From the NCBI RefSeq assembly GCF_006345805.1, contig NC_042999.1:154194001-154258000 (forward strand): 64,000 nucleotides of DNA. Reading direction: 5' to 3'. A program made the translations under genes and the position numbers. Source of the stretch: Octopus sinensis. Taxonomy: Eukaryota. Position 1 is the first letter of the stretch, and every line of letters starts with the position of its first letter. Positions 6,195-61,900 of this stretch are shown here, in pieces. Below the pieces are notes generated by a model. It saw nothing but the letters and a program-made list of their open reading frames with translations, did not search any database and had not been told where the DNA came from.

Positions 6195-6420
6195 TTCATT
6201 GCCCACAAGGGGCTAAACATAGAGGGGACAAACAAGGACAGACAAACGGATTAAGTCGATTACATCAACCCCAATGCGTAACTGGTACTTAATTTATCAA
6301 CCCCAAAAGGATGAAAGGCAAAGTTGACCTCGGCGGAATTTGAACTCAGAACGCAGCAGCAGACAAAATAACACAAAGCATTTTGCCCAGCTTGCTCACG
6401 TTTCTGCCAGCTCGCCGCCC
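6195..6420 (-). mobile_element. SINE family C
   Basis: Reverse complement of the family C sequence. Confidence 0.8.
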
Positions 6421-8016: not shown

Positions 8017-9472
8017 CGATTATTCCAATAATCAACTAAAATATCACAATTTAATCAATTTACCTGCAACAAAACATTTTTATAACAGAGTTTATCAAAA
8101 ATAGTTTATGGTCATAGGTATGGTTGCTTCCCGACTAAGGGTTTTGTGGTTCAATACCACAACAAAGCACTGAGTAATGCTTTGGGTTGACCAAAGCTTG
8201 AGAGTAAATTATGGTAAACGGAAACTTTGTGAAAGCCCTCCAGTAGGGTTAGTAATGGGAGATCTGTTCCCATTCCCAGGGAGGTGGAGACAGAGTTAAT
8301 ACCTCATCTGGATAAACACCACTATTTAATCCTTGGATGCTGTCCAGCCCTTCAATTGTCCCTTGATTCTGTCAGCAGCCCTGACAGCCTTTTATTGGCT
8401 CTTGCGCCGGTGACATGTAAAAGCACCCACTACACTCTCAAAGTGGTTGGCATTAGGAAGGGCATCCAGCTGTAGAAACTCTGCTAGATCAAGATTGGAG
8501 CCTGGTGCAGCCATCTAGTTCGCCAATCTTCAGTCAAATCGTCCAACCCATGCTAGCAAAGAAAGTGGACATTAAACGATGATGATGATGATGGGAAAAA
8601 GTGGAAGGGCAACACTCATTAAGATTAATCCTTTTGTTGCCATATTTCAGTGGAGATACACTGCCTTTATTTCAATTACTTTTTAAAATAATGAAGAATT
8701 TAGTAGAAATAACTGTGATTATTAAGCTGGTATTTAGAACATAAATTAGCATTAAATTTCAATGGAAGTTCTAAATTAAATCACTTTAACATAGGAAGTT
8801 TGAATCACAGAACCAGGGGTGGTGACAAGCAGGCTGGTATAGAAAGAGTAAAGCCAGGAAGACTATTAAAAAATATATTTAAAGCATTCAGAGGGGAGTT
8901 CTAATCCAGAGGTAAATCATTGTCTCCTACCCTCCCCAATCTCGGAGACCCTGCAGGAAATGTCATGCCCTTTCTCTTCTCGCTGGGCTAATTAAAATAA
9001 CTCTAAGCATGTCAGTTTATTCTGTTATTATTGCTATTATTTGAAAAATTCCCCGCCCTGTCTGGCAATCTGCTTTCACCCAATTTTGGCAATGAGCTTC
9101 ACTCAGCCAAGCTAGAGAAATTTCTCCCATATTTTAATCCTTCTGGCACACATGCATGCATACATACACGTGTATATACACCCAAATATATATACATACA
9201 CATGCATATAAATACATATATATACACACATGAATACGGACACGTGTGTATATACACAAATATACATACACACATGGATATAAATACATTTATATACACA
9301 TACATATAAATACACCTATATATATATAGATTATATATCTATAATATATACTTAGGCACAGGAGTGGCTGTGTGGCACCTTGGGCAAGTGTCCTCTATAG
9401 CCTTGAGCTGACCAAAGCCTTGTGAATGGATTTGGTAGACGGAAACTGAAAGAAGCCCATCATATATACATA

Positions 9473-9960
9473 TCTCTTATTATAAAAGGCAGATTTTATC
9501 TGCCTCCCTTTGGGAGTTATACAAATCTACAATATAGGATTTCTTCAATTACAATTTACCTTGTATTTTTAAGAGTACAATGCATCGCGTCATGCCAGGT
9601 CCAGTTTTTAAAATTCAAACTCCAATTAAGCAAAATTTACAGAAAACTCACATTCTGGTGTGTGTGTCAAATGCTTTTCTTAGTCTGGTTTACAGCACAC
9701 GCAAACACACACACACAGTGGGCAACGAATAAAATGAAAGTAATTGACTTACTGTAGTGAGTGATTCTTTCACTCTGCCTCCCACTTCTTCTTTCCACAC
9801 ATAGACACGCAAATATATAAATAAAATTGTAAGCTAACGTGCATGTGTGTGAGTGGGTGTGTGTGGGTGTGTGTGGGTGTGCGCGTGTGTGTGTGTGTGA
9901 GGGTGTGTGTGTGTGTGTGTGCGTGTGCGTGAGTGTGTGACAGGAAAGTTTTTTACGAAT
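9473..9960 (+). mobile_element. Helitron-like element, subfamily B (3' end not found)
   Basis: TCTCTTATTATAAAAGGCAG start; first ~255 bp near-identical to 10960-11228. Confidence 0.6.
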
Positions 9961-10156: not shown

Positions 10157-10453
10157 CCATTTAAGAAACACACAAAAACCGTTACATTCACTTCAACATT
10201 TAAATTTAATTTGCCAAAATATTTTCGTCGCTTTGAGACCGCGACCTGTTCACTGACAAAAATATCGTGCTAACAGGTCGCGGTCTCAAAGCGATGAAAA
10301 TATTTTGACAAATTAAATTTAAATGTTGAAGTGAATCTAACGGTTTTTGTGTGTTTCTTAAATGGCTTATAAACACCTTCAACGCTGCAACTGTTTTCGT
10401 TCCAGCACACGATCTCAGATCAAGTCACTTGCTATGCAAGTACATCTCTGTAA
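10157..10453. mobile_element. Palindromic fold-back element, same family (94-bp arms, 21-nt spacer)
   Basis: 10157-10250 pairs with 10272-10365; left end truncated. Confidence 0.85.
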
Positions 10454-10947: not shown

Positions 10948-10959
10948 TATATATATATA

Positions 10960-11410
10960 TCTCTTATTATAAAAGGCAGATTTTATCTGCCTCCCTTTGG
11001 GAGTTATACAAATCTACAATATAGGATTTCTTCAATTACAATTTACCTAGCAGTTTTAAGAGTACAATGCATCGCGTCATGCCAGGTCCAGTTTTTAAAA
11101 TTTAAACTCCAATTAAGCAAAATTTACAGAAAACTCACATTCTGGTGTGTGTGTCAAATGCTTTTCTTAGTCTGGTTTACACCACACGCAAACGCACACA
11201 CACAGTGGGCAACGAATAAAATGAAAGTAAATGTAATATTTGTTTCTGTCTATCACGCTGATAGATACATGAGTAAAATGTATGGGAAGCTAACAGATAA
11301 CAGTGAGTGAAAATGTTCTTGGAAGAGAGTAAATTAGCGACAGTGATTTGAGGAAGACTAAACTGAAACTATGAAACAGTGTTTATGTATAAACAGACGA
11401 CACTTATATA
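10960..11410 (+). mobile_element. Helitron-like element, subfamily B, truncated
   Basis: Same 5' end as 9473; interrupted by a piggyBac-like left end. Confidence 0.6.
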
Positions 11411-17335: not shown

Positions 17336-17483
17336 AGAAACATTAAATCTCTACTATGGTATCTAACTTTCTTCTGACAGTCAACACTCAAAGGGGATAT
17401 ATATATATATATATATATATATCCCCTTTGAGTGTTGACTGTCAGAAGAAAGTTTGATACCATAATAGAGATTTAATGTTTCT
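17336..17483. repeat. 148-bp palindrome centred on (AT)13
   Basis: 61-bp arms with 2 mismatches. Confidence 0.9.
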
Positions 17484-17500
17484 ATATATATTTATATATA

Positions 17501-17718
17501 AGGCGATCTGGCAGAAACGTTAGCGCGCTGGGCGAAATACTTAGCGGTATTTCGTCTGCCATTACGTTCTGAGTTCAAATTCCGTCAAGGTCGACTTCGC
17601 CTTTCATCTTTTCAGGGTCGATAAATTAAGTACTAGTTACGCACTGGGGTCGTTGTAATCGACTTAATCCCTTTGTCTGTCCCTGTTTGTCCCCTATGTG
17701 TTTAGCTCCTTGTGGGCA
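17501..17718 (+). mobile_element. tRNA-derived SINE family C
   Basis: GGCG..CTGGCAGAAACGTTAGC head, GAGTTCAAATTCC B-box, GACTTYGCCTTTCATC body; same family at 54833-55070 (+) and 6195-6420 (-). Confidence 0.85.
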
Positions 17719-17896
17719 CGTAAAAAGCATCCACTACACTCACGGAGTGGTTGGCGTTAGGAAGGGCATCCAGCCGTAGAAACACTGCCAGATTTAACTG
17801 GGCCTGATGAAGCCTTCTGGCTTCACAGACCCCAGTAGAACCGTCCAACCCATGCTAGCATGGAAAACGGACGCTAAACGATGATGATGATGATGA
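17718..17896 (+). mobile_element. Young 5'-truncated family B copy fused to SINE C
   Basis: Shares diagnostic bases with 54114-54414. Confidence 0.85.
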
Positions 17897-19186
17897 TATA
17901 TACACACACACACACTAATTGTATATACATGAGTAAATTATACATATATATATATATATATACACACACACATATACACACACTGATTCTATAAACATGA
18001 CCAGGCGTCTTCCCAACAAGATACTATTAGCTGCTCATGTGTGCATTAAATGATTTATCTCTAACTGGCTGAAGTACTCTGTTGAGCTTATCTTAATGGA
18101 ACAGTAAATTATATCATCATCACACACAGAGTATTTAGGATTCATAATATAAGATCAAGATAAAATCAATAAGTGATTTGAGTTTCATGTGACTGAAATA
18201 TGAAAAGTCTTGTATTTGCTGTGTTTGCTTAACTCCAGATCATTGCTTATCAAGGCAGCCTATGATTAAAGGCATCCATGCAATGACTACCCAGACTTTT
18301 AGCAGGCATCGTTTATCTAGGATTACATTAGACTGTGTCCCTCCTTTTTAACATGGTAGGACGTCATATAAATTACAGGTGCTATTTCTTGTAGGCTGAG
18401 CCATCACTTAGTATTGGAAAGGTACAAGGTCTTAGAAAATCTGCCTTGGCATATTTTATCTGACCAATGCCAAAATGGAAAAGTGGTAATTAAAGTGTGT
18501 GTATGTAAATACACACACACACACACACACACACACGCATATATATATATAAGTCCAACCCATGCTAGCATGGAAAACGGACGCTAAACGATGATGATGA
18601 TGATGATGATATATATATATATATAACACATATACACACCATCCATCTGCATAAGTGCTGGATGGCAATGTTGATACAGGTTTCTCTTTGTAACCCCCAA
18701 AAGCATAGTCTCAAGTTCTATCTCACAGTATGGAACAAACTGATGCCTTGTGAGTGGAATTGTTAGATGGAAACAGTAACAGGACTCCATCATGGGCAGA
18801 TATGTTTTTCTCAGAGGAAAGAAAACAAACAGCATCACTTGCACGAGTCATGCTTCTTTACAGCCATCATCTGACACATGTATGTGTGTGTGTATGTATG
18901 TATGTATGTATGTATGTATGGGAGGGTCATCATGCTGGTAATAATAAACACACACACTGGTTCGGTCCTTTATTGTTATTGTTTTTGTTCAGTATTGTTC
19001 ATGATCTTTTTTCTTTGTCAAATACAAAAAAAAAACAAAAACAATATTGAACAATAAAGGACTGTTTATTATTACTGGCATAATGCCCCTCCCAAGATTC
19101 AATAGTATTTTTTTCAACACACAAATTCACATCAACAAGCTGTAAACGAAATACAAATACAAACTATATATACATGTATATGTATA

Positions 19187-21280: not shown

Positions 21281-21842
21281 CAGGGTGGAAAAAGTCATGC
21301 ACAAAATAAGCTCAAAATGCTCCAGAATTGCCAAAGGCATGCTTCAAATTGTCTAAAATTGAATAAAATAAATAAAATAATGATGAATACACACATACTC
21401 GTACATGATGAACAAAACGAATAATAATTATAATAACAATTGCAGCGTGGAAGGTGTTTGTAAGCCATTTAAGAAACACACAAAAGCCGTTCGATTCACT
21501 TCAACATTTAAGTTTAATTTGTCAAAATATTTTCATCGCTTTGAGACCGCGACCTGTTCACTGACAAAGTCCGTGCTGCATCTGGACTTTGTCAGTGAAC
21601 AGGTCGCGGTCTGAAAGCGACGAAAATATTTTGACAAATTAAACTTAAATGTTGAAGTGAATCGAACGGCTTTTGTGTGTTTCTTAAATGGCTTATAAAC
21701 ACCTTCCACGCTGCAATTGTTTTCGTTTCAGCACACGATCTCAGATCAAATTACTTGCTATGCGAGTACATCTCCGTAATTATAATAACGGAATATTAAT
21801 AAAATGTGAACGGTTTTGGTGCATTACTTTTGGACCACCCTA
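21281..21842. mobile_element. Tc1-type MITE hosting a fold-back element
   Basis: CAGGGTGGAAAAAGTCATGCAC ... GTGCATTACTTTTGGACCACCCT imperfect TIRs. Confidence 0.6.
21435..21780. mobile_element. Palindromic fold-back element (138-bp arms, 11-nt spacer, extra right-hand extension)
   Basis: 21435-21572 is the near-perfect reverse complement of 21584-21721; second copy at 10157. Confidence 0.85.
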
Positions 21843-22790: not shown

Positions 22791-23708
22791 TTAAGTGGAG
22801 TACCAAGCCCAACCCTAAGTTAACCAGACTCAGAAAAAATCCTGGTCTCTTAAAATGACAATTCTATAATGCTTAAAATACTTTGTGTATTTCACAGTCA
22901 GTAAATATTTAGATTGAGATTAATTAGCTAAATAATTAATAATTTCACACATGGAGGCAAAGTGGCTGAGTTCCTTTCATGTGTTGGGCCTCAAGGAGGC
23001 AATGACCAAGACCCTTGGCATTATATTGTGCTTAAGACCCATCAAGCCAAGCAAAATTGCAGTCTTGGCAGATACCAGTGTCATGCAAATGGCACCGGTG
23101 CTGGTTTCACATAAAAGCACCCATTACACTCTTGGAGGGGTTGCCATTAAAAAGAGCATTTCAGCTACAGAAAACCATGCCAAGTCAGACTGGAGTTTGG
23201 TGAAGCCTTCCAGCTTACCAGCCTTGATCAAACTATCCAACCCATGCCAGGTATGGACAACGGAAGTCAAATGATGATGAATAAAGATGGAAGAATTTTA
23301 CTTTTTATAATTTAATATTTTCCTAAATTCTATATAAGCACTTCACTTAGTGGTTAGGGTATTTGGCAAAAAATCGCAAGGTCTCGATTTCGATTCCTGG
23401 TTTCTTGTGTTCTTGTGCAAGACACTTTATTTCATGTTGCTCCAGTTCACTCAGCTGGCAAAAATGTGTTGTACCAGTAATTCAAAGGGACCCACCTTGT
23501 CACATTCTCTTGTCAGACTGTATCTCCCTGAGAACTACGTTAAGGGTACATGTGTCTGTGGAGTGCTTGCACTTTAATTTCATAAGCAGGCTGTTCCACT
23601 GAACAGATCAATTAGAACCCTTGTCATTGTAACCAAGAGTTACCATCATTATCAAAGTGACAGTTATAAATTATAAGGATTCTGCAGAGTGAGCTTATTG
23701 AAACTCAC

Positions 23709-23831: not shown

Positions 23832-26469
23832 CTGTGGCAGAAATGTTAGTCCTTGTAGGAACTCAGAACTGACATGCTAACCTTTCGTCATTTGACACAG
23901 GATCACCTCCTCCAATGCCTCCTCCCCTCACAAAGGATCTTTGTCTTACAAGTTACTTGGTGACCCCTGCCAGTGCAGGTGCCACTTAGAAAGCATCCAG
24001 TCCATACTGTAAAGTGGTAGGCATTTAGAAGGGCATCAAGCAGTAAAAACCTTGCCAAAACTGACCTTGCTTGTGCCTGTGCCATGTAAAAAGCACTGTC
24101 CACTCTGCTGGGTGGTTGGTGTTAGGAAGGGCACCTAGCTGTAAAAATCCTGCCAAAACAAAGTCTGATGCAAGATTGTGCCTGACCAGCTCCTGTTAAA
24201 CCATCTAACCCATGCCAACATGGAAGGACATTAAACGATGATGGTGAATAACAGTTTCAAATTTTAGCACAAGGCCAGCAAGTTCAAGGGATGAAGTAAG
24301 CCAATTACATCAACCCTGAAACCAATTTTATCGACCCTGAAAGGATGAAAGGCAAAGTCGACCTTGTCAGAATTTGAACTCGAAATGTGAAGAAATAATG
24401 TATTACTGCTTAGCATTTTACCTGGTGTGCTAACAATTTTTGTCAGCTTGTTGCCTTCAATAATAATAAACCACCATTGAAGTATGAAACTACTATTTGT
24501 GACATACATACATCATCTAACTAAAACAAATAAGGATGATGTCATAATTATAAACAAAAAAAACATTGACACAGAAAGGAAGACATTTGTGAAATCTGAA
24601 AACAGTCAAAATAAAGTCTGTAACAGAAACCAGATGGTCTGAGTTGATGGTGCCAATTGTGGTAATAATGGTAAATCCAGAAGAGTTGGCTGAGTATCTC
24701 ATCTGATTAAATTTCTGTATATATATATATATATATATATATTATATCAATTTACTACTATCTAACCTTGGACCAATCAAAGTCTTGTGAGTGGATTTGG
24801 TAGACAGAAACTGAAAGAAACCTGTCGCATGCGTGTGTGTGTGTGTGTGTGTGTATACTGAGGCTGTGTGATAAGAAGCTTGCAACCCAACCACATAGAT
24901 CTGGGTTCAGTCCCACTGCGTTGAACCTTGGGCAATTGTCTTCTGCTTTAGCCTCTGGCTGACCAAAGCCTTGTGAGTGGATATGATAGGCAGAAACTGA
25001 AAGAAGCCCATCACATACATACATGGTGCAGCCTTCTGGCTTGCCAGCCCTCAGTCAATCTGTCCAACCCACGCCAGCATGGAGAGCAAATGTTAAACGA
25101 TGATTATATATAATAATAAATGCCAAAACAAATTTGAGTGTCAGCACATCACACTTTGACCCCGTCTCTCACTATTCAATGACACTTCTACTATTCCTCC
25201 TCCTGGGGTGAAAGTAATAGTACGCATAGAGACTGTGAGGGCAGTAGTAGATTGACAAGTTGTGATGGTAATGGGGTGATAGTAATAGTATGAGCTGTAG
25301 TTGTGAGAGAGGGGGAGGCAAAAGTAATGATGGTAGTGGTAGCAAGGGTGGTTAGGGATGAGGGTGATAGTAAGCGATGTGAAAGACAGTGATGATGGTG
25401 ATGGAGGGGAAGGTGGTGAAGTCAAAAGTATTGATGGTGGTGGCGTCAGAAGTCTGAATGGTGTGTATATAACAGTTGTGATGGTGATGGTTGAAAACAA
25501 TAAACAGAATGAGAGAGAAAGAATGAGGTTAGACAGAAAAAAAAAATTGTACTGACCCCTGAGTGGGAAGACAAAAGAATGTTTATCATGCAGCTTTGCA
25601 ATAAGTTCCAAGTCGACAAACTATATCATTGTTCTGATGAAAGTTGTTCCTTGCTTGAAAAATATTGGTCAAGTTTTAATAAAATTTAATATGTGCTCAA
25701 TACATGAAGTGTTATTGTTGGGTCCAAGGCCCAATGAAAAGCCCTCCACAGGAGCTACCTTAAAAGCAGCTCAACAGGGGCAGCAAAAGAGACCAATAGA
25801 ATAAGTACTAGCCTTACAATAGGTCCTAGGGTCGATTTGTTCGACTAAAAAAGCAGTGCCCCAGCATGGCCACAGCCAAATGACAAACAAGTAAAATACC
25901 AATATCGGTGTATTTTGCCAAACAGCTGAGTTACGGGGACGTAAACACACCATCATCAGTTGTCAAGCAATGTTGGGGGGACAAACAGACACACAAACAT
26001 ATAGACACACATGCACATATATATATACATATATATGGGCTTCTTTCAGTTTCCATTTACCAAATCCACTCACAAGGCTTTGGTCAGCCCGAGGCTATTA
26101 GTAGAAGACACTTGCCCAAGGTGCCACGCAGTGGGAATGAACCCGGAACCATATGGTTGGTAAGCAAGCTACTTACCACACAGCCACTCCTGTGCCTATG
26201 GAAAAAAACAGGGAGGGAGAGAGATTAGGATTTCTTCTTTCTATAACTGACATTTGGTTGGTCCTTCCATTTTAATAATGAGCAAGGCAGAGACAAACTG
26301 TTTCATAATTAGCTACTTCGTTGCAATTATAATGACACTTGTAAACAGAAACATTCAGAGTGTTTGTTCAACATCATTAGTTGCAAGATGACAGAATTGT
26401 GTGACACTGGTTGTCACATGTTCTGTTTTGTAAACGGTGAACCAGAAGAAGACAATAAACTAAGCATAC

Positions 26470-26929: not shown

Positions 26930-27029
26930 NNNNNNNNNNNNNNNNNNNNNNNNNNNNNNNNNNNNNNNNNNNNNNNNNNNNNNNNNNNNNNNNNNNNNNN
27001 NNNNNNNNNNNNNNNNNNNNNNNNNNNNN
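26930..27029. other. Assembly gap (100 N)
   Basis: Run of 100 N. Confidence 1.
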
Positions 27030-31672: not shown

Positions 31673-33002
31673 CGTATACATACAATGGGTTTCCTTCAGT
31701 TTCTCTTTACCAAATCCACTCAGGAGGCTTTGATCGACTTGGCTATTGTAGATGTGCCCAAGGTGCCATGCAATGGGACTGAACCCAAGACCACATGACA
31801 AGGAAGTAAACTTCTAATCACACAGCTATGCCTATGTTGGTAGATTAAGTACTATCATTATTGCCTGGTCCCAGGTCAGCCCTAATGAAGCAGATCTGTG
31901 ACCAGTCATTTCAGCCATGACCACTCTGTCTTTTTTCCCTACATGCTGTACATTGAGGACCACATTATCCGATGCCTTTTACTAAGTTGGTAGCATGTAA
32001 TTTGAGCAAGATTTAGCTGTTATTTTTAACAGGCCCAGCAGCTTGTTAGCTCAGTCAGCACAACCGTTTGTAGTCAGTGTCATTAGAACATTTGTGAGAT
32101 GTCTGGTTTTAATAAAAAAGTTAAAATACCAAAAATATATCTTTCCTTTCCTTTGGGATGGGGGGAGGGCACTTAATCTGAAAACAATATTGATCTTTCC
32201 TAATCTTCTTAATGTCATTATTTTATTAAGCAATTAATTAGTCATTAGTAGTTGAAACTGTGTTGTAATCTACTTAGAATCCAAAATGTTTAATTACTTA
32301 TACACAATCAGAATCTCAATCAAATCAAAATCAAAAATGGAAATTGTAGTTGTGGCCGGTGCCAGTGCTGCCTGACTGGCTCCCGTGCTGGTGGCACATA
32401 ATAAGCACCATTCATGCGTGGGTCATTGTCAGTGCGGCTTGACTGGCTCCCCATGCTGATAGCACGTAAAAAGCATCATCCAAACATAGCCGATGCCAGT
32501 GCCACCTGACTGGCTCTTGCACCAGTGGCACATAAAAAGCACCCACTACACTCTTGGAGTGGTTGGCATTAGGAAGGGTCCAGCTGTAGAAACATTACTA
32601 GATCAGACTGGAGCCTGGTGCAGCCTCCTGGCTTGCCAGTCTTCAGTCAAATTGTCCAACACATGCTAGCATGGAAAGCAGACATTAAGCAATGATGATG
32701 AGGAGTAAAATTTATAAAAGAAACGTTGTAGAAAGCAAAACAACTGAGTAAGTAATTGGCAGGGATTTTTTTGTTCATTTTCTTCCTGGAAAGGGTGTTA
32801 ATTTTTAAATATTTTAAAGTCTGTTTTACGCCATTTCATCTCTCATTAATCTCATGCTATTTTTGGCTGGTGTTTCACAAACTTAACTTGCATTCCATCA
32901 ATTGTACCAATGAGGGTTCCAGTTGATCCAATCAACAGAACAGCCTGCTCTTGAAATTAACGTGCAAGTGGCTGAGCACTCCACTGACACACATACCCTT
33001 AA

Positions 33003-34442: not shown

Positions 34443-35281
34443 CTAACAGAGAAAATATTTCAATTAATTTTCCATTGGTTCCGAAAACCAGTGACCATGT
34501 TCATTAACCATTCCAAGACATTATGCAGTTCATGTGGAATTTAGATTACTAAAACTAATTTAATACCTTCAGACTGATTTCCATGTATCCCATGTATTGT
34601 TCAGATAAACTTGCTCCATAGTCATTAAGTCAGTTTGAATCTCATTACACTTTGTAACCGAGGTTAATTACATCTTGCTGTCAGTGCCTACAGACCAAAG
34701 TAGATATCTACTTCAACCTCCACCACCACCATCACCATCACCACCATTCTTTAACTTGCTTTGTTTCTCTTCTGCATTTCTCAGTTCATTTAACATTGGT
34801 AACGTCTGAGAAATTCATGAGTATTTATTCAACCTTAGTTTGCTGTCCTTTGGTTAGAAACATGGTATTTTCCAGCATACGAGTTGAATTCTTCAAAATT
34901 TGCAGTCAAAAAACAAAAAGGGAAATTGTATTAAAAAGGGCATCGAGCTGTAAAACCTGCTTTAATATTCCTCTAACCCATTCTAGCATAGAAAAACAGG
35001 CATAAAACAAACAAATGAACTCCTTACATGTATATCATACTAGTATATGACCTACATGTTTACATGTATAAAAATAGACTGGTGCTCACTTGGTCACAGC
35101 AAGGAGTGTTTCTAGTTGGCCTGATGAATGGAACAACCTGCATGTGAAATTAACATGCAAGTGGTTTGAGCACTCCACAGACATGTGTACCCTTAATTAG
35201 TTCTCAAGGAGAGCCAGTGTGACACAGAATGTAAAAGGCTGAGTTGGCTCTTTGAAAAACTAGTAAGCTAAGTAAAATCAC

Positions 35282-35719
35282 TGTCTGTAGTGTTTACTTG
35301 CACCACTTTATATTCTCAGTTCAATTCCTACTGAGGTCAGCTTATACTATTCATACTTCTAAGATCATTAAACTAAAGTTGATTTTATGTTTTTGGCACT
35401 GTGTCCATGCTGGCGCTGTCTGTGCTGGCACCACATAAAAAGTACCTGTACCAGCACTACATAAAAAAAGCATCTGTGCTCTTTGCATGCTTCTAGCACA
35501 GGTGCCCTTTGCATACCTCTAGCACAGATGCTTTTTTTATGTAGTGCTGGTACAGGTACTTTTGATGTGGTGCCAGCACAGACAGCGCCAGCATGGACAC
35601 AGTGCCAAAAACATAAAATCAACTTTAGTTTAATGATCTTAGAAGTATGAATAGTATACGCTGACCTCAGTAGGAATTGAACTGAGAATATAAAGTGGTG
35701 CAAGTAAACACTACAGACA
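35282..35719. repeat. Near-perfect long inverted repeat (199-bp arms, 40-bp spacer)
   Basis: 35282-35480 is the reverse complement of 35521-35719, with 2 mismatches. Confidence 0.95.
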
Positions 35720-35755
35720 TTTTGTCCAATGTGTTTACCATATGTAGCAATTTAC

Positions 35756-35811
35756 CATTGTTGCGATGGTGATGGAGTCAGCACCAAGTCTGATTAAATT
35801 TAGGTCATTGT
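35756..35811 (-). CDS. Candidate coding exon (56 nt, phase 1-0); xNDLNLIRLGADSITIATM
   Basis: Acceptor ctgactcctttgtttttccaacAG, donor ATG|GTAAAT; only one open frame. Confidence 0.5.
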
Positions 35812-49396: not shown

Positions 49397-49504
49397 GACG
49401 TTACTTTATATGTAGCACTTGCCCTGACAGGATCACCAAGTACCTTTTTGCATCTTGCAAAGTACTTGATGACCCAGTCAGTTCAGGTGTCACTTTAAAA
49501 GCAT

Positions 49505-49830
49505 CCAGCTGTAAAAACCTTGCCACAACTGACCTCACCTGTGCTTGTGCCATGTAAAAAGCACTAAGTCCACTCTGCTGAGTGGTTGGTGTTAGGAAGG
49601 GCATCCCACTGTAAAAACCTTGCCAAAACAAACCTCACCTGTGCTTGTGCCATGTAAAAAGCACTAAGTCCACTCTGCTGAGTGGTTGGTGTTAGGAAGT
49701 GCATCCAGTCGTAAAAACCTTGCCAAAACTGACCTCGCCTGTGCTTGTGCCATGTAAAAAGCACTAAGTCCACTCTGCTGAGTGGTTGGTGTTAGGAAGA
49801 GCATCCCACTGTAAAAACCTTGCCAAAAAT
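49505..49830. repeat. Tandem array, 100-bp unit x about 3.2
   Basis: GTAAAAACCTTGCC recurs at 49511, 49611, 49711 and 49811; unit is a family B segment. Confidence 0.95.
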
Positions 49831-54113: not shown

Positions 54114-54414
54114 TAAAAGCACCATCCGTTCGTGTCCGTTGTCAGCCTTGCCTGGCCCCCGTGCCAGTGGCACGTAAAAACACCATCCGTTCGTGGCCGT
54201 TTGCCAGCTCTGTCTGGCACCTGTGCAGGTGGCATGTAAAAGGCACCCACTACACTCACGGAGTGGTTGGCGTTAGGAAGGGCATCCAGCCGTAGAAACA
54301 CTGCCAGATCTGACTGGGCCTGATGAAGCCTTCCGGCTTCACAGACCCCAGTTGAACCGTCCAACCCATGCTAGCATGGAAAACGGACGCTAAATGATGA
54401 TGATGATGATGATG
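54114..54414 (+). mobile_element. Young 5'-truncated family B insertion
   Basis: Intact CpGs, (GAT)n tail; empty site preserved at 53435-53571. Confidence 0.9.
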
Positions 54415-54832: not shown

Positions 54833-55070
54833 GTAAGGCGGCGAGCTGGCAGAAATGTTAGCACGCCGGGCGAAATGCTTAGCGGTATTTCATCTGCCAT
54901 TACATTCTGAGTTCAAATTTCGCCGAGGTCGACTTTGCCTTTCATCCGTTTGTGGTCGAAAAATAAAGTACCAGTTTCGCACTGGGGGGGTCAATGTAAT
55001 CGACTTAATCCCTTTGTCTGTCCTTGTTTGTTCCCTCTATGTTTAGCCCCTTATGGGTAGTAAAAGAAAT
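54833..55070 (+). mobile_element. SINE family C
   Basis: Near-identical to 17501-17718. Confidence 0.85.
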
Positions 55071-55274
55071 GGCAGAGTTTCTACAGCTGGATGCCCCTTC
55101 CTAACGCCAACCACTCCGAGAGTAAAAAGGACCCACTACACTCTCGGAGTGGTTGGCGTTAGGAAGGGCATCCAGCTGTAGAAACTCTGCCAGATCAAGA
55201 CTGGAACCTGGTGCAACCATCTGATTGCCAGCCCTCAGTCAAAACCGTCCAACCCATGCCAGCATGGAAAACGG

Positions 55275-58940: not shown

Positions 58941-61900
58941 TAGTTTGTTTTAATTTATTTTTTCAATTTTGAACACTCTACTTGAGGGAGTTTTTTTTCT
59001 ACTAATTACTATGATAACCAGTTGGTTAAAAAAAAAATTCTTCATCATCATCATCATCGTTTAACGTCCGCTTTCCATGCTAGCATGGGTTGGACGATTT
59101 AACTGAGGGCTGGCAAACTAGATGGCCGCAACAGGCTCCACGAGACCAGCCGTGGCTGTGTGGTTAAGTTTGCTTCCCAACCATACGGTTCCAGGTTCAG
59201 TCCCACTGTGTAGAACCCTGGGTAGGTGTCTTCTATAACAACCCCGAGTCAATCAAAGCCTTGTGAGTAACTTGATAAATAGTAATTGAAGGAAACCTAA
59301 CATAGGCACAGGCGTGGCTGTGTGGTAAGAAGTTTGCTTTCCAATCACATTGTTCCAGGTTCAGTCCCACTGTGTGATACCTTGGACAAGTGTTTTCTAC
59401 TATAGCCTCAGGCCAACCCAAACCTTGTCAGTGGATTTGATAAATAGAAACTGAAAGAAGCCCATCGTATGTATGTACATCTGTGTTTGTTCCCCACCAC
59501 TGCTTGACAACTGGTGTTGATGTGTTTATGTCCCCTGTAACTTAACGGTTCGGCAAAAGTGATCAATAAATTAAGTACCAAGGCTTAAAAAAGATATACA
59601 AGTACTGGCATTGATTTGACTAAAAATTCTTCAAGGTGGTGCCCCAGCATGGCCACACAGTCATAAAATGAACAAATCCATCATAGAAGCAGTGATCTTC
59701 ATTTCTCATCTTCTATAAAAACATGTCTAGCTATGGGGAAAATATTACCATCGTTGGGAACAGGTGAGGGCAGGTGACAAGAAGGGCATCCAGCCATAGA
59801 AAATCTGTCTCAATGAATTCCATCTAACCCATGCAAGCATGGTGAAGTGGATGTTAAAAATTCTAATTTTGAAAAGGATGGGGTAAATTAATTACACCTG
59901 GCTGGTATTTTATTTCATTTACCCTGAAAGAATGGAAAACAAAGTTGACCTCAGCACAATTTGAACTCAGATCAAGCTGGTGAAAAAAAACAGCTAAGCA
60001 TTTTGTTTCACACTTAGATGCTAACATTCATATAAGAAAATGAATACCTCTGCCCATTTAATTGGATATCATACAAGCTGTGACCTTTCCCTCGTATTGA
60101 TATATATCAAATAGTCCTTACAAGACATAAAACAACACATTCATAAGAAGATCGCATTTCTTGATTATACTGACCCTAATATGACATTGTAGTCATGGTC
60201 AACGCCAGTGTCATCTCAGTGGCACCCATGCTAGTGGTACGTAAAAAGCACCATTCAGGCATTGGGCCTCACAGGGGCAATGACAGGTGACCATTGGTGA
60301 TATACTGTGCTTGTGTTGACCTCTCGAGCCAAATGAGACCGTAGTCGTGGCCAATGTTGGTGTCAGATCAATAGCACCTGTGCCAGTGGCACATAAAATG
60401 CATGCACTACACTCTCGGAGTGGTTGGTGTTAGGAAGAGCATACAGCTGTAGAAACCTTGCCAAATCAGATTGGAACCAGGTGCAGCCCCACTGGCTTAC
60501 CAGTTTTCAGACAAACCGTTTCGACCCATGCCAACATAGAAAGCAGATGTTAAACAATGATGATGATTGGTCCCAAAGTGAAGTAAAGGCTAAGTCAATA
60601 GGTGCTGAATGCAAAATTTGACCATAAACAGGTGTAGCTAAACACCTCAAGTCATTCTATCTATGGCACTCAACCATCCAAGATGAATCTAAAAGATTCC
60701 TTTCTTAAAGTGACACAAGATCTACAGTTAATCCACTAGGCTTATCCCATCAGTTCAGGCAGGATAAAACACAATTCTGTCCTTAGTTGGATTTTAACTC
60801 ATCACAAGTATGATAAACATTGATATCTCACAACAGAATCTGTTTTTCCTTTTGATACTAACCCACCTGGTGCCACACCTGGTTCTATAATACAAACGTC
60901 CTGTTTTAAAGCTATCCAAATTAAAACCTTCCATAAAAAATTTCATGGTAATTTACATTCCAAACACCACCCTTTCATTACCAACCCGGCTGAAACCACC
61001 TCTGGCTCTGTAGTACAAATGTCTTGTTTTCATAAGTTTTGAATTAAAATCTTCCACCAAACCTTAGTCATAATTTATGTTCCTAAAACTAGCTGAATGA
61101 TAACTAAGTTATTTTCCTAAATTCTTTTGTTATAGTTAAAGTAACTGAAAGAAACACAGAGCATCTCAAAATAAATATAGTAATGAAAGGGTTCATAATG
61201 TCAGAGTCATTTAACTAAATCCTTCATTATTTTCAAAATTTATTGAAACTAAGTCTATCAATAGGAATACAGTAACAAAATGGTTAAGAGAAATATATGA
61301 AAAATGAATTTGACAGTTTTCGTTTGTTCATCAAATGACCAAAACGATACTTGTGCATTCTAACTGCCATTCCTCTATTCTATTGTGTCTCATATTGACG
61401 TTGTATCTGGACCTCACATCTCTCTCTCACCTTCCAGATGAGCAAGCCATGAATTCACCTGTTCAGTAATACAGTGCTCCTCTCCCTCTATCAGATTTTT
61501 ATTTCTCAGTGGAGAGGGGGGGGTCTTCTCTTGTAGGTACTTGGCAACCTCAGTGGTACTGGTACCAATATAAAAAAAACACAGTATATTGGGCATCCAG
61601 CTGTTGAAACCATGCCAAAACAGGTATAGACCCTAGCAGAAAACCTCTGGATTGTTTCTTGTTATCAAGCAAACCAACCCATGCCAACATGGGAAAACAG
61701 GATGTTAAACTATGATGATGATGTGAGGAGACATCCTCACGCTTTTTCCATATAAATGATGATGATGATCAATAACTTAGAATATGTTCATATTCTTATT
61801 TAACTCACAGTGAGATTTTGTAATATGCAAATTTCAGCACAAATATGCAAATCAGGCCACCCACTACTGTTGTAGCTTAATTTATGATTGCTTTATATAG

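What the first reader, a model, noticed from the sequence alone, without database searches (positions are those of the whole stretch)
35282..35719. Recent locus-specific 199-bp fold-back hairpin 36 bp from a candidate exon, with its seed hairpin preserved
Seen: the arms differ at only 2 of 199 positions. They are a mosaic of unrelated decayed repeat scraps, so this is not a MITE with TIRs but a one-off inverted duplication. The centre repeats a ~25-bp unit twice (TGCTCTTTGCATGCTTCTAGCACAGG / TGCCCTTTGCATACCTCTAGCACAGA). The first unit closes a small stem GCATCTGTGCT..AGCACAGGTGC. Inference: a pre-existing mini-hairpin primed fold-back synthesis. If the minus-strand gene is real, the pre-mRNA would carry ~200 bp of dsRNA just downstream of the 35756 donor, between it and the 20-nt micro-exon. 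Established: coleoid cephalopods have extensive ADAR A-to-I editing that depends on dsRNA, so this could be a newly created editing, splicing or endo-siRNA element.
Basis: partly seen in the sequence, partly recalled or inferred. Interest (0 to 1): 0.7.

Follow-up and report, generated by a model that had tools for sequence, protein, structure and literature searches.

The report
Young in-place inverted copy of SINE
A 194-199-base stretch of old repeat DNA was recently copied backwards next to itself, making a near-perfect hairpin; this is an ordinary replication error, and nothing shows that it lies in a gene or has a function.

Summary
The arms are 35282-35480 and 35521-35719: 199 nt, 2 mismatches, a 40-nt spacer. 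As RNA it folds at -381 kcal/mol (z = -42.6).

The arms are two recognisable pieces. The outer ~96 nt are a CpG-decayed fragment of a tRNA-like SINE ('S'). The inner ~103 nt are 26-nt units of a second repeat ('Y').

The two spacer units have the same orientation as the right-arm units. The SINE also runs on past the palindrome edge, but only into the right flank. So the right arm plus spacer is probably the parent. The left arm (about 35282-35475) is then a new inverted copy made in place, joined at a 5-nt microhomology (GTGCT/AGCAC).

This argues against a MITE. There is no target-site duplication, no second copy in the window, and the edge cuts through an older SINE.

Fold-back or template-switch copying is therefore supported in kind.

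The gene context is not supported. The 'exon' peptide matches nothing, no Pfam domains were found nearby, and 24 equally good exon-like segments occur in the window.

Four other palindromes lie in the same 64 kb, and such repeats are already reported as abundant in octopus. Interest is low.

The parts
35282..35480 (+). Left arm. It is inferred to be the derived inverted copy: 35282-35475 (194 nt) is new DNA, and 35476-35480 (GTGCT) is the junction microhomology and also the start of central unit u1.
   Evidence: 199 nt, 2 mismatches. (polarity). (the left flank is a remnant of repeat family X, not a continuation of the SINE).
35481..35520 (+). 40-nt spacer. It is the rest of unit u1 plus most of unit u2, and it forms the top of the hairpin, partly self-paired (6 + 4 bp).
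35521..35719 (+). Right arm, inferred to be the parental sequence. It carries the derived base at both arm mismatches (35564 and 35659).
35476..35531 (+). Central 26-nt tandem units u1 (35476-35501) and u2 (35502-35527). Both are reverse-complement copies of the family-Y unit (GTGCCGGTGGCACATAAAAAGCACC). That is the same orientation as the two units inside the right arm.
   Evidence: TRF period 26, 2.2 copies. (scores 15.0 and 12.75 against the reverse-complement Y unit, versus 7.25 and 7.5 against Y)..
35624..35743 (-). Old, CpG-decayed fragment of tRNA-like SINE family S (consensus positions about 20-132). It crosses the outer edge of the right arm at 35719 and runs about 20-24 nt into the right flank.
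   Evidence: nhmmer alignment starts 19 nt outside the arm, E = 2e-6. (anchored flank score has p about 0.0009). (1 CpG in the arm versus 15 in the consensus).
35282..35377 (+). Copy of the same SINE S fragment (consensus positions about 41-132) in the left arm. It stops at the arm edge.
35415..35475 (+). Two Y-type 26-nt units in plus orientation in the left arm. Their mirror images lie at 35526-35586 in the right arm.
   Evidence: D3 direct repeat, spacing 26..
35060..35275 (-). Truncated copy of dispersed repeat family X, which forms the left flank. It is not part of the palindrome.
   Evidence: five other copies in the window. (the X consensus itself resembles the SINE S head at this point, which explains why the flank looks S-like).
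35756..35811 (-). It is not supported as coding.
   Evidence: no protein shares three 5-residue words with it. (no Pfam match nearby). (24 comparable exon-like segments in the window).

Best explanation
This is a young interstitial inverted duplication made in place by a DNA-synthesis error. It was not inserted as a mobile element.

The ancestral locus, in window orientation, probably read: X-repeat remnant, then four tandem 26-nt Y-type units (u1, u2, r1, r2), then an old decayed SINE S fragment on the minus strand whose head points right.

The proposed sequence of events is as follows.
1. A strand being synthesised from right to left had copied the SINE, then r2, r1, u2 and u1.
2. Its 3' end (AGCAC, the complement of GTGCT at 35476-35480) snapped back onto its own GTGCT (opposite AGCAC at 35521-25), leaving a 40-nt loop.
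3. It then copied about 194 nt of itself.
4. It returned to the proper template at the X remnant.

In the four-point template-switch notation this is the 1-4-3-2 / 3-2-1-4 type, which creates a single inverted repeat. An inter-strand switch gives the same product.

The result is a 199-bp near-perfect palindrome. It is most likely neutral. If it is transcribed it would be one more long dsRNA of the kind ADAR hyper-edits.

Shown directly: the palindrome, its repeat content, the orientation of the units, the continuation of the SINE into the right flank only, and the absence of a TSD or a second copy.

Inferred: which arm is the parent, the 5-nt priming step, neutrality, and recency. Arm homogenisation by conversion could also keep the arms 99% alike.
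For: - Arms are 199 nt with 2 mismatches.
- The arm holds 1 CpG against 15 in the SINE consensus, and is roughly 65-70% identical to it over positions 64-132. The SINE copy is therefore old while the duplication is young, about 1% divergence.
- nhmmer extends the SINE alignment 19 nt beyond the right-arm edge.
- The right flank, anchored at the arm edge, matches SINE positions 19-40 with p about 0.0009 against random window 24-mers. The left flank reaches only p about 0.035.
- The left flank is accounted for by family X. Family X's own consensus is S-like at that point.
- Spacer units u1 and u2 score 15.0 and 12.75 against the reverse-complement Y unit, versus 7.25 and 7.5 against the forward unit. 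Left-arm units show the opposite preference. The spacer is therefore a direct continuation of the right-arm array.
- GTGCT at 35476-80 is both the regular start of unit u1 and the complement of AGCAC at 35521-25.
- There is no TSD and no other copy of the arm in the window.
- The locus is 8 kb from the only N gap and is not at a contig end.
- Template switches are known to create perfect inverted repeats from adjacent sequence (PMC7954356).
Against: - No ancestral or orthologous sequence could be obtained, so the event is reconstructed from one allele only.
- Both arm differences are derived on the arm I call parental. That has a 1-in-4 chance, but it would also fit an error-prone copy in the opposite polarity.
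- The outer junction (35281|35282) shows no microhomology.
- 194 nt is longer than any event in the great-ape gold-standard set, which has a median of 12 nt and a maximum of 128 nt.
- The inner priming match is only 5 nt. The retained parental sequence alone has no significant hairpin (third fold, z = -0.6).
- The species' genome could not be searched, so dispersed copies cannot be excluded.
Confidence: 0.62

Rival explanations
1. It is one copy of a dispersed fold-back (MITE-like) repeat family whose other copies lie outside this 64-kb window.
For: Palindromic dispersed families do exist here. Family F has two copies, at 10157-10365 and 21435-21721, about 88% alike. The palindrome at 55070-55192 lies in repeat sequence that also follows another S copy. 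A palindromic Harbinger repeat is the main edited repeat in Xenopus.
Against: There is no TSD of any length with +/-6 nt of boundary slack; the only match is a 4-mer of a kind expected by chance. There is no second copy in the window, while family F shows two. The right arm is collinear with an old SINE copy that continues past the palindrome end, which a self-contained element would not do. The arm content is heavily CpG-decayed, so any amplification would have had to start from an already dead SINE.
Confidence: 0.1
2. Two independent S-plus-Y SINE copies had inserted tail to tail. A later template switch or gene conversion then made their inner 199 nt identical (quasi-palindrome correction), so no net inverted duplication occurred.
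For: Both flanks score above random against the SINE head when anchored at the arm edges (top 0.23% for each). nhmmer extends into both flanks. The two flanks are only about 42% alike, as expected for independent decay. Conversion of quasi-palindromes into perfect ones is the classic template-switch outcome.
Against: The left flank is explained without any SINE. It aligns to family X over about 200 nt. X copies at the homologous spot resemble the SINE head as much as or more than the locus does (7.0 and 8.5 versus 5.0). The left junction needs a 3-4-nt insertion. The 24-nt anchored test gives only p about 0.035 for the left flank.
Confidence: 0.12
3. The palindrome is an assembly or sequencing artefact, for example a chimeric fold-back read carried into the consensus.
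For: The window is a scaffold with a 100-N gap at 26930-27029. No independent reads or assemblies could be reached.
Against: It is interstitial with unique flanks on both sides and lies 8 kb from the gap. Its centre sits on a sensible microhomology inside a tandem array. The arms differ by two substitutions rather than being identical or differing by indel noise. Four other palindromes in the window include two copies of one family at different loci, which cannot be read artefacts.
Confidence: 0.06
4. The hairpin is a functional RNA element: an intronic ADAR editing or splicing modulator, a long-hairpin endo-siRNA source, or a newborn miRNA.
For: About 199 bp of near-perfect dsRNA is predicted on either strand. 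Long near-perfect dsRNA correlates with hyper-editing, and octopus is an extreme case. Template switching can generate new miRNA hairpins (PMC10710096, listed).
Against: No gene was found. The exon peptide has no match, there are no Pfam domains in unique ORFs from 23.6 to 62 kb, and exon-like segments are common by chance. Rfam gives only sub-threshold generic hairpin hits on both strands: 50 bits against a gathering score of 90. The arms are dead repeat sequence. With 1% divergence there has been too little time to see any constraint.
Confidence: 0.05

Closest known systems
Short-range template-switch mutations (four-point model; Loytynoja and Goldman 2017; Walker et al. 2021, PMC7954356)
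   Same: A stretch of adjacent sequence is copied in reverse complement and creates a perfect inverted repeat. The 1-4-3-2 / 3-2-1-4 arrangement yields a single hairpin. Either an intra-strand or an inter-strand switch is possible.
   Different: The copied tract here is about 194 nt. The great-ape gold-standard set has a median of 12 nt and a maximum of 128 nt. The ancestral state is not available here.
Fold-back inversions (inverted duplications) primed by snap-back at short inverted repeats (yeast and human; PMC7467729, PMC10622511, PMC3907307, listed)
   Same: A 3' end anneals to a short inverted match a few tens of nt away on the same strand and is extended, leaving a short spacer between the arms.
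   Different: Those events follow a double-strand break and give chromosome-scale duplications, often with a terminal deletion or a dicentric. Here the copy is short and interstitial, and synthesis returned to the original template.
Palindromic MITEs or fold-back repeats (for example the Xenopus Harbinger repeat, PMC5625713; family F in this window)
   Same: A hairpin of a few hundred nt with near-perfect arms and a short loop, and a potential stand-alone dsRNA.
   Different: There is no TSD and no second copy in the window. The ends fall inside an older SINE copy instead of at an element boundary.
Inverted SINE pairs as ADAR substrates (inverted Alu pairs and their equivalents)
   Same: SINE-derived sequence pairs with an inverted copy nearby.
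   Different: The pair arose by local duplication of one decayed copy, so the arms are 99% alike. It did not arise from two independent insertions, which are typically 70-90% alike.

Membership tests
MITE / fold-back transposon | Target-site duplication flanking the terminal inverted repeats | tested here: not met
   no flanking direct repeat longer than a chance 4-mer, allowing +/-6 nt of boundary slack.
MITE / fold-back transposon | Multiple dispersed copies with different flanks | tested here: inconclusive
   no other copy in 64 kb, whereas the true fold-back family F has two. The rest of the genome could not be searched.
MITE / fold-back transposon | Element ends are independent of neighbouring sequence (it is an inserted unit) | tested here: not met
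   the SINE S alignment runs through the right-arm edge into the flank (16 of 21 matches, anchored p about 0.0009).
Template-switch / fold-back inverted duplication | The new segment is the reverse complement of sequence within tens to hundreds of nt | tested here: met
   197 of 199 positions complementary, 40 nt apart.
Template-switch / fold-back inverted duplication | Short pre-existing inverted match at the switch point | tested here: inconclusive
   GTGCT (the start of unit u1) is complementary to AGCAC at 35521-25, so a 5-nt match is plausible. That it existed before the event cannot be shown without the ancestral allele. No microhomology is seen at the outer junction.
Template-switch / fold-back inverted duplication | An ancestral or outgroup sequence that lacks the inverted copy | not testable with these tools
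   no other assembly of this species or its relatives could be reached.
miRNA / hairpin RNA gene | Match to a curated RNA family at its gathering score | tested here: not met
   the best hit is mir-9457 at 50 bits against a gathering score of 90, on both strands. This is a generic hairpin hit.
miRNA / hairpin RNA gene | Small-RNA reads with Dicer-type phasing | not testable with these tools
   No expression data available.
Intronic ADAR substrate | Long, nearly perfect intramolecular dsRNA | tested here: met
   about 199 bp stem, -381 kcal/mol, z = -42.6.
Intronic ADAR substrate | Lies inside a transcribed gene (adjacent real exon) | tested here: not met
   no word match for the exon peptide among 5.8 billion protein clusters; no Pfam domain; 24 similar exon-like segments by chance. 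Transcription itself was not testable.

The most novel reading that the evidence does not exclude
In-place snap-back duplications at the tandem-unit tails of SINEs may be a recurrent process in this genome, distinct from palindromic transposons and from chance inverted SINE pairs. If so, they would contribute to its unusually large stock of near-perfect local dsRNA-forming repeats, which is the raw material for hyper-editing and for new hairpin RNAs. In this window, two of the five palindromes look locally made: this one and 17336-17483, which is centred on a (TA)n run.
Probability: 0.12. Interest if true: 0.45.

Novelty: new member of a known kind. Interest (0 to 1): 0.2.

Why it matters
On its own it matters little. 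It is one neutral-looking structural mutation in repeat-rich, apparently non-coding DNA.

Its use is as a clean worked example. The SINE that crosses one edge and the orientation of the central tandem units allow the parent arm, the new arm and the junction microhomology to be inferred from a single allele.

If many such events exist genome-wide, they would help explain why octopus has so many near-perfect local inverted repeats (PMC5625713).

Tried and rejected
- Reaching other assemblies through the spurious 111-aa ORF that spans the hairpin. An exact look-up and a homology search found nothing. Control look-ups of two other long window ORFs and a SINE-derived ORF search were also empty. The collection simply does not index such ORFs for this genome, so the negative result is uninformative.
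- Metagenome scan for the right junction: no match.
- Literature search for the SINE sequence strings: none found.
- My first impression that the whole arm is one SINE including its 3' end. This was rejected: the inner 103 nt score no better than shuffles against the SINE 3' half. They match family-Y units instead.
- The idea that the left flank is a SINE head. This was downgraded: family X explains it.
- A shared 5' extension of SINE S that would have fixed the parental arm of the 17336-17483 palindrome: not significant.
It was replaced by packed unique ORFs, which covered only 23.6-62 kb and ORFs of at least 40 aa.
- The Rfam mir-25 hit at 21531-21625. It sits on the apex of a family-F palindrome and shows no AUUGCAC seed, so I treat it as a false positive.

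Full report
**1. Observation**

The inverted repeat is exactly as described. The arms are 35282-35480 and 35521-35719: 199 nt, 99% complementary, with a 40-nt spacer. The two differences are at 35342/35659 and 35437/35564, and pairing stops at the arm ends.

TRF finds the central 26-nt repeat: 2.2 copies, 86% matches, at 35476-35531. As RNA, the minus strand 35262-35739 folds into one continuous stem at -381.3 kcal/mol. Shuffles give -121.8 +/- 6.1, so z = -42.6. The spacer itself pairs a little, 6 + 4 bp.

**2. What the arms are made of**

A window self-comparison found no second copy of the arm.

The outer ~96 nt of each arm are a fragment of a tRNA-like SINE, which I call S. Good copies lie at 6326(-), 17573(+) and 54911(+); diverged copies lie at 24360(-) and 59947(-). 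nhmmer with a profile of these copies aligns consensus positions about 23-131. The arm has 1 CpG where the consensus has 15, so this is an old, methylation-decayed copy.

The inner ~103 nt are not significantly similar to the 3' half of S; the alignment score equals the shuffle mean. Instead they consist of 26-nt units that match the unit of another abundant repeat, Y (..GTGCCGGTGGCACATAAAAAGCACC..). Y has many copies, for example at 32529, 44791, 44842, 29747(-) and 63175(-).

S is followed by Y-type sequence at other S copies too. The arm may therefore be one composite SINE copy rather than unrelated scraps.

**3. Flanks and polarity**

The left flank (about 35060-35275) is a truncated copy of a third dispersed family, X, which has five other copies in the window.

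Anchored at the arm edges, both flanks at first looked like the S head, and nhmmer extends into both. A stricter 24-nt anchored test separates them. The right flank matches S positions 19-40 without a gap, 16 of 21 over the core, with p about 0.0009 against random window 24-mers. The left flank gives only p about 0.035 and needs extra bases at the junction.

Other X copies at the homologous position resemble the S head as much as or more than the locus does. The left flank's S-likeness is therefore explained by its being X.

The two spacer units u1 and u2 align full-length to the reverse complement of the Y unit, scoring 15.0 and 12.75 against 7.25 and 7.5 for the forward unit. The left-arm units prefer the forward orientation. 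On the plus strand, u1, u2 and the two right-arm units therefore form one direct four-unit array that continues into the minus-strand S fragment and its head.

The simplest reading is that the right arm plus spacer is parental and the left arm is the new inverted copy. I put this at roughly 3:1 over the reverse. The counter-hint is that both arm differences are derived on the right arm, judged against the S consensus and the sister unit. That has a 1-in-4 chance under neutral mutation after the event.

**4. Mechanism**

GTGCT at 35476-35480 is both the regular start of unit u1 and the complement of AGCAC at 35521-35525. The proposed sequence is:
- A strand synthesised from right to left copies through u1.
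- Its 3' end pairs back on itself through these 5 nt, leaving a 40-nt loop.
- It copies 35526-35719 of itself, which produces 35475-35282.
- It returns to the original template at the X remnant.

An inter-strand switch gives the same product. This is the inverted-repeat-generating class in the four-point template-switch model (PMC7954356). It resembles snap-back priming in fold-back inversions (papers listed).

Three caveats apply:
- The tract of about 194 nt exceeds the longest event in the great-ape set, which has a median of 12 and a maximum of 128.
- The outer junction has no microhomology.
- The retained parental sequence alone has no significant hairpin (third fold).

Under the favoured polarity its left half belongs to the new copy, and it pairs with unit 1 simply because unit 1 resembles unit 2. 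Under the opposite polarity it would be a real seed. The mechanism class is the same either way.

**5. Not a MITE**

Four points argue for in-place origin:
- There is no target-site duplication.
- There is no second copy in the window.
- The right edge cuts through an older SINE that continues outside.
- The content is a dead, CpG-depleted repeat.

The window provides a positive control for what a dispersed fold-back family looks like. Family F has copies at 10157-10365 and 21435-21721, about 88% alike, with shared sequence beyond the palindrome.

**6. Gene and function claims**

- The exon-like segment 35756-35811 (minus strand) has one open frame. Its peptide shares not even three 5-residue words with any of 5.8 billion protein clusters.
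- No unique ORF of at least 40 aa on either strand between 23.6 and 62 kb hits Pfam.
- No long coding ORF exists in the window.
- A simple rule (polypyrimidine-YAG, an open frame of 40-250 nt, GTRARt) finds 24 such segments in the window.
- Part of the 36-nt gap between the hairpin and this 'exon' is SINE head.
- Rfam gives only sub-threshold hairpin matches on both strands.

That the hairpin sits in a pre-mRNA is therefore unproven. If it is transcribed, it would be a typical hyper-editing substrate.

Porath et al. report that O. bimaculoides has an exceptionally high fraction (4.4e-3) of loci with near-perfect inverted partners within 2 kb, and very high hyper-editing (PMC5625713). In this window about 1.6% of bases lie in such arms.

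**7. Limits**

The species could not be verified with tools, and its genome could not be searched. Recency is inferred from 1% arm divergence. Concerted evolution of hairpin arms is a real alternative: the two family-F copies differ from each other by changes that are mirrored in both arms of each copy.

**8. Verdict**

This is a real, probably recent, locally generated inverted duplication of an old SINE-plus-tandem-unit segment. It is a new instance of a known kind of mutation. There is no evidence that it lies in a gene or has a function. Interest is low.

Noticed in passing
window 10157-10365 and 21435-21721: These are two copies of one fold-back repeat family ('F'). The arms are 94 nt (97% complementary, 21-nt loop) and 138 nt (98%, 11-nt loop). 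The copies are about 88% alike, and both are followed on the right by shared non-palindromic sequence (GTTTTCGTT.CAGCACACGATCTCAGAT). Several differences between the two copies are mirrored in both arms of each copy, which suggests arm homogenisation or selection for pairing. Copy a looks like copy b with an outer-left truncation and a 20-nt central deletion.
   Followed up: partly
window 21531-21625 (+): This is the only Rfam hit at gathering score in the window: mir-25 family, 41.1 bits against a gathering score of 40.5. It sits exactly on the apex of the family-F palindrome and shows no AUUGCAC seed. It is most likely a hairpin false positive.
   Followed up: partly
window 17336-17483: A perfect-centre palindrome with 74-nt arms, 97% complementary and no spacer, centred on a (TA)n run. 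It ends 18 nt upstream of the head of SINE S copy 17502+. It may be a second locally made fold-back seeded by a self-complementary microsatellite. The parental arm could not be assigned.
   Followed up: partly
window 55070-55192: A palindrome with arms of about 53 nt, 90% complementary, in Y-family 3' sequence, directly after the tail of SINE S copy 54911+. The same reversed Y piece follows the S copy at 59947(-), so this inverted arrangement seems to belong to a composite dispersed repeat.
   Followed up: partly
window 26930-27029: A run of 100 N, showing that the window comes from a scaffolded assembly with a gap.
   Followed up: no
whole window: About 52% of the window aligns to another place within the same 64 kb (37% to three or more places). 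No ORF looks coding, and no tRNA genes were found. The window appears to be intronic or intergenic repeat-rich DNA.
   Followed up: partly
window 9462-9743 vs 10949-11230; 49501-49628 vs 49701-49828; 17715-17897 vs 54231-54413: Young direct duplicates: 97.5% over 282 nt, 1.5 kb apart; 96% over 128 nt at a 200-nt spacing; and 95.6% over 183 nt. They were not examined further.
   Followed up: no
family X (e.g. 23472-23637, minus strand) vs SINE S consensus positions 23-39: The X consensus contains TTTGCCAGCTGAGTGAA, which resembles the S head TTAGCACGCTGGGCGAA at 13 of 17 positions. This is either a shared module between two SINE families or coincidence. It can mislead flank analysis.
   Followed up: partly
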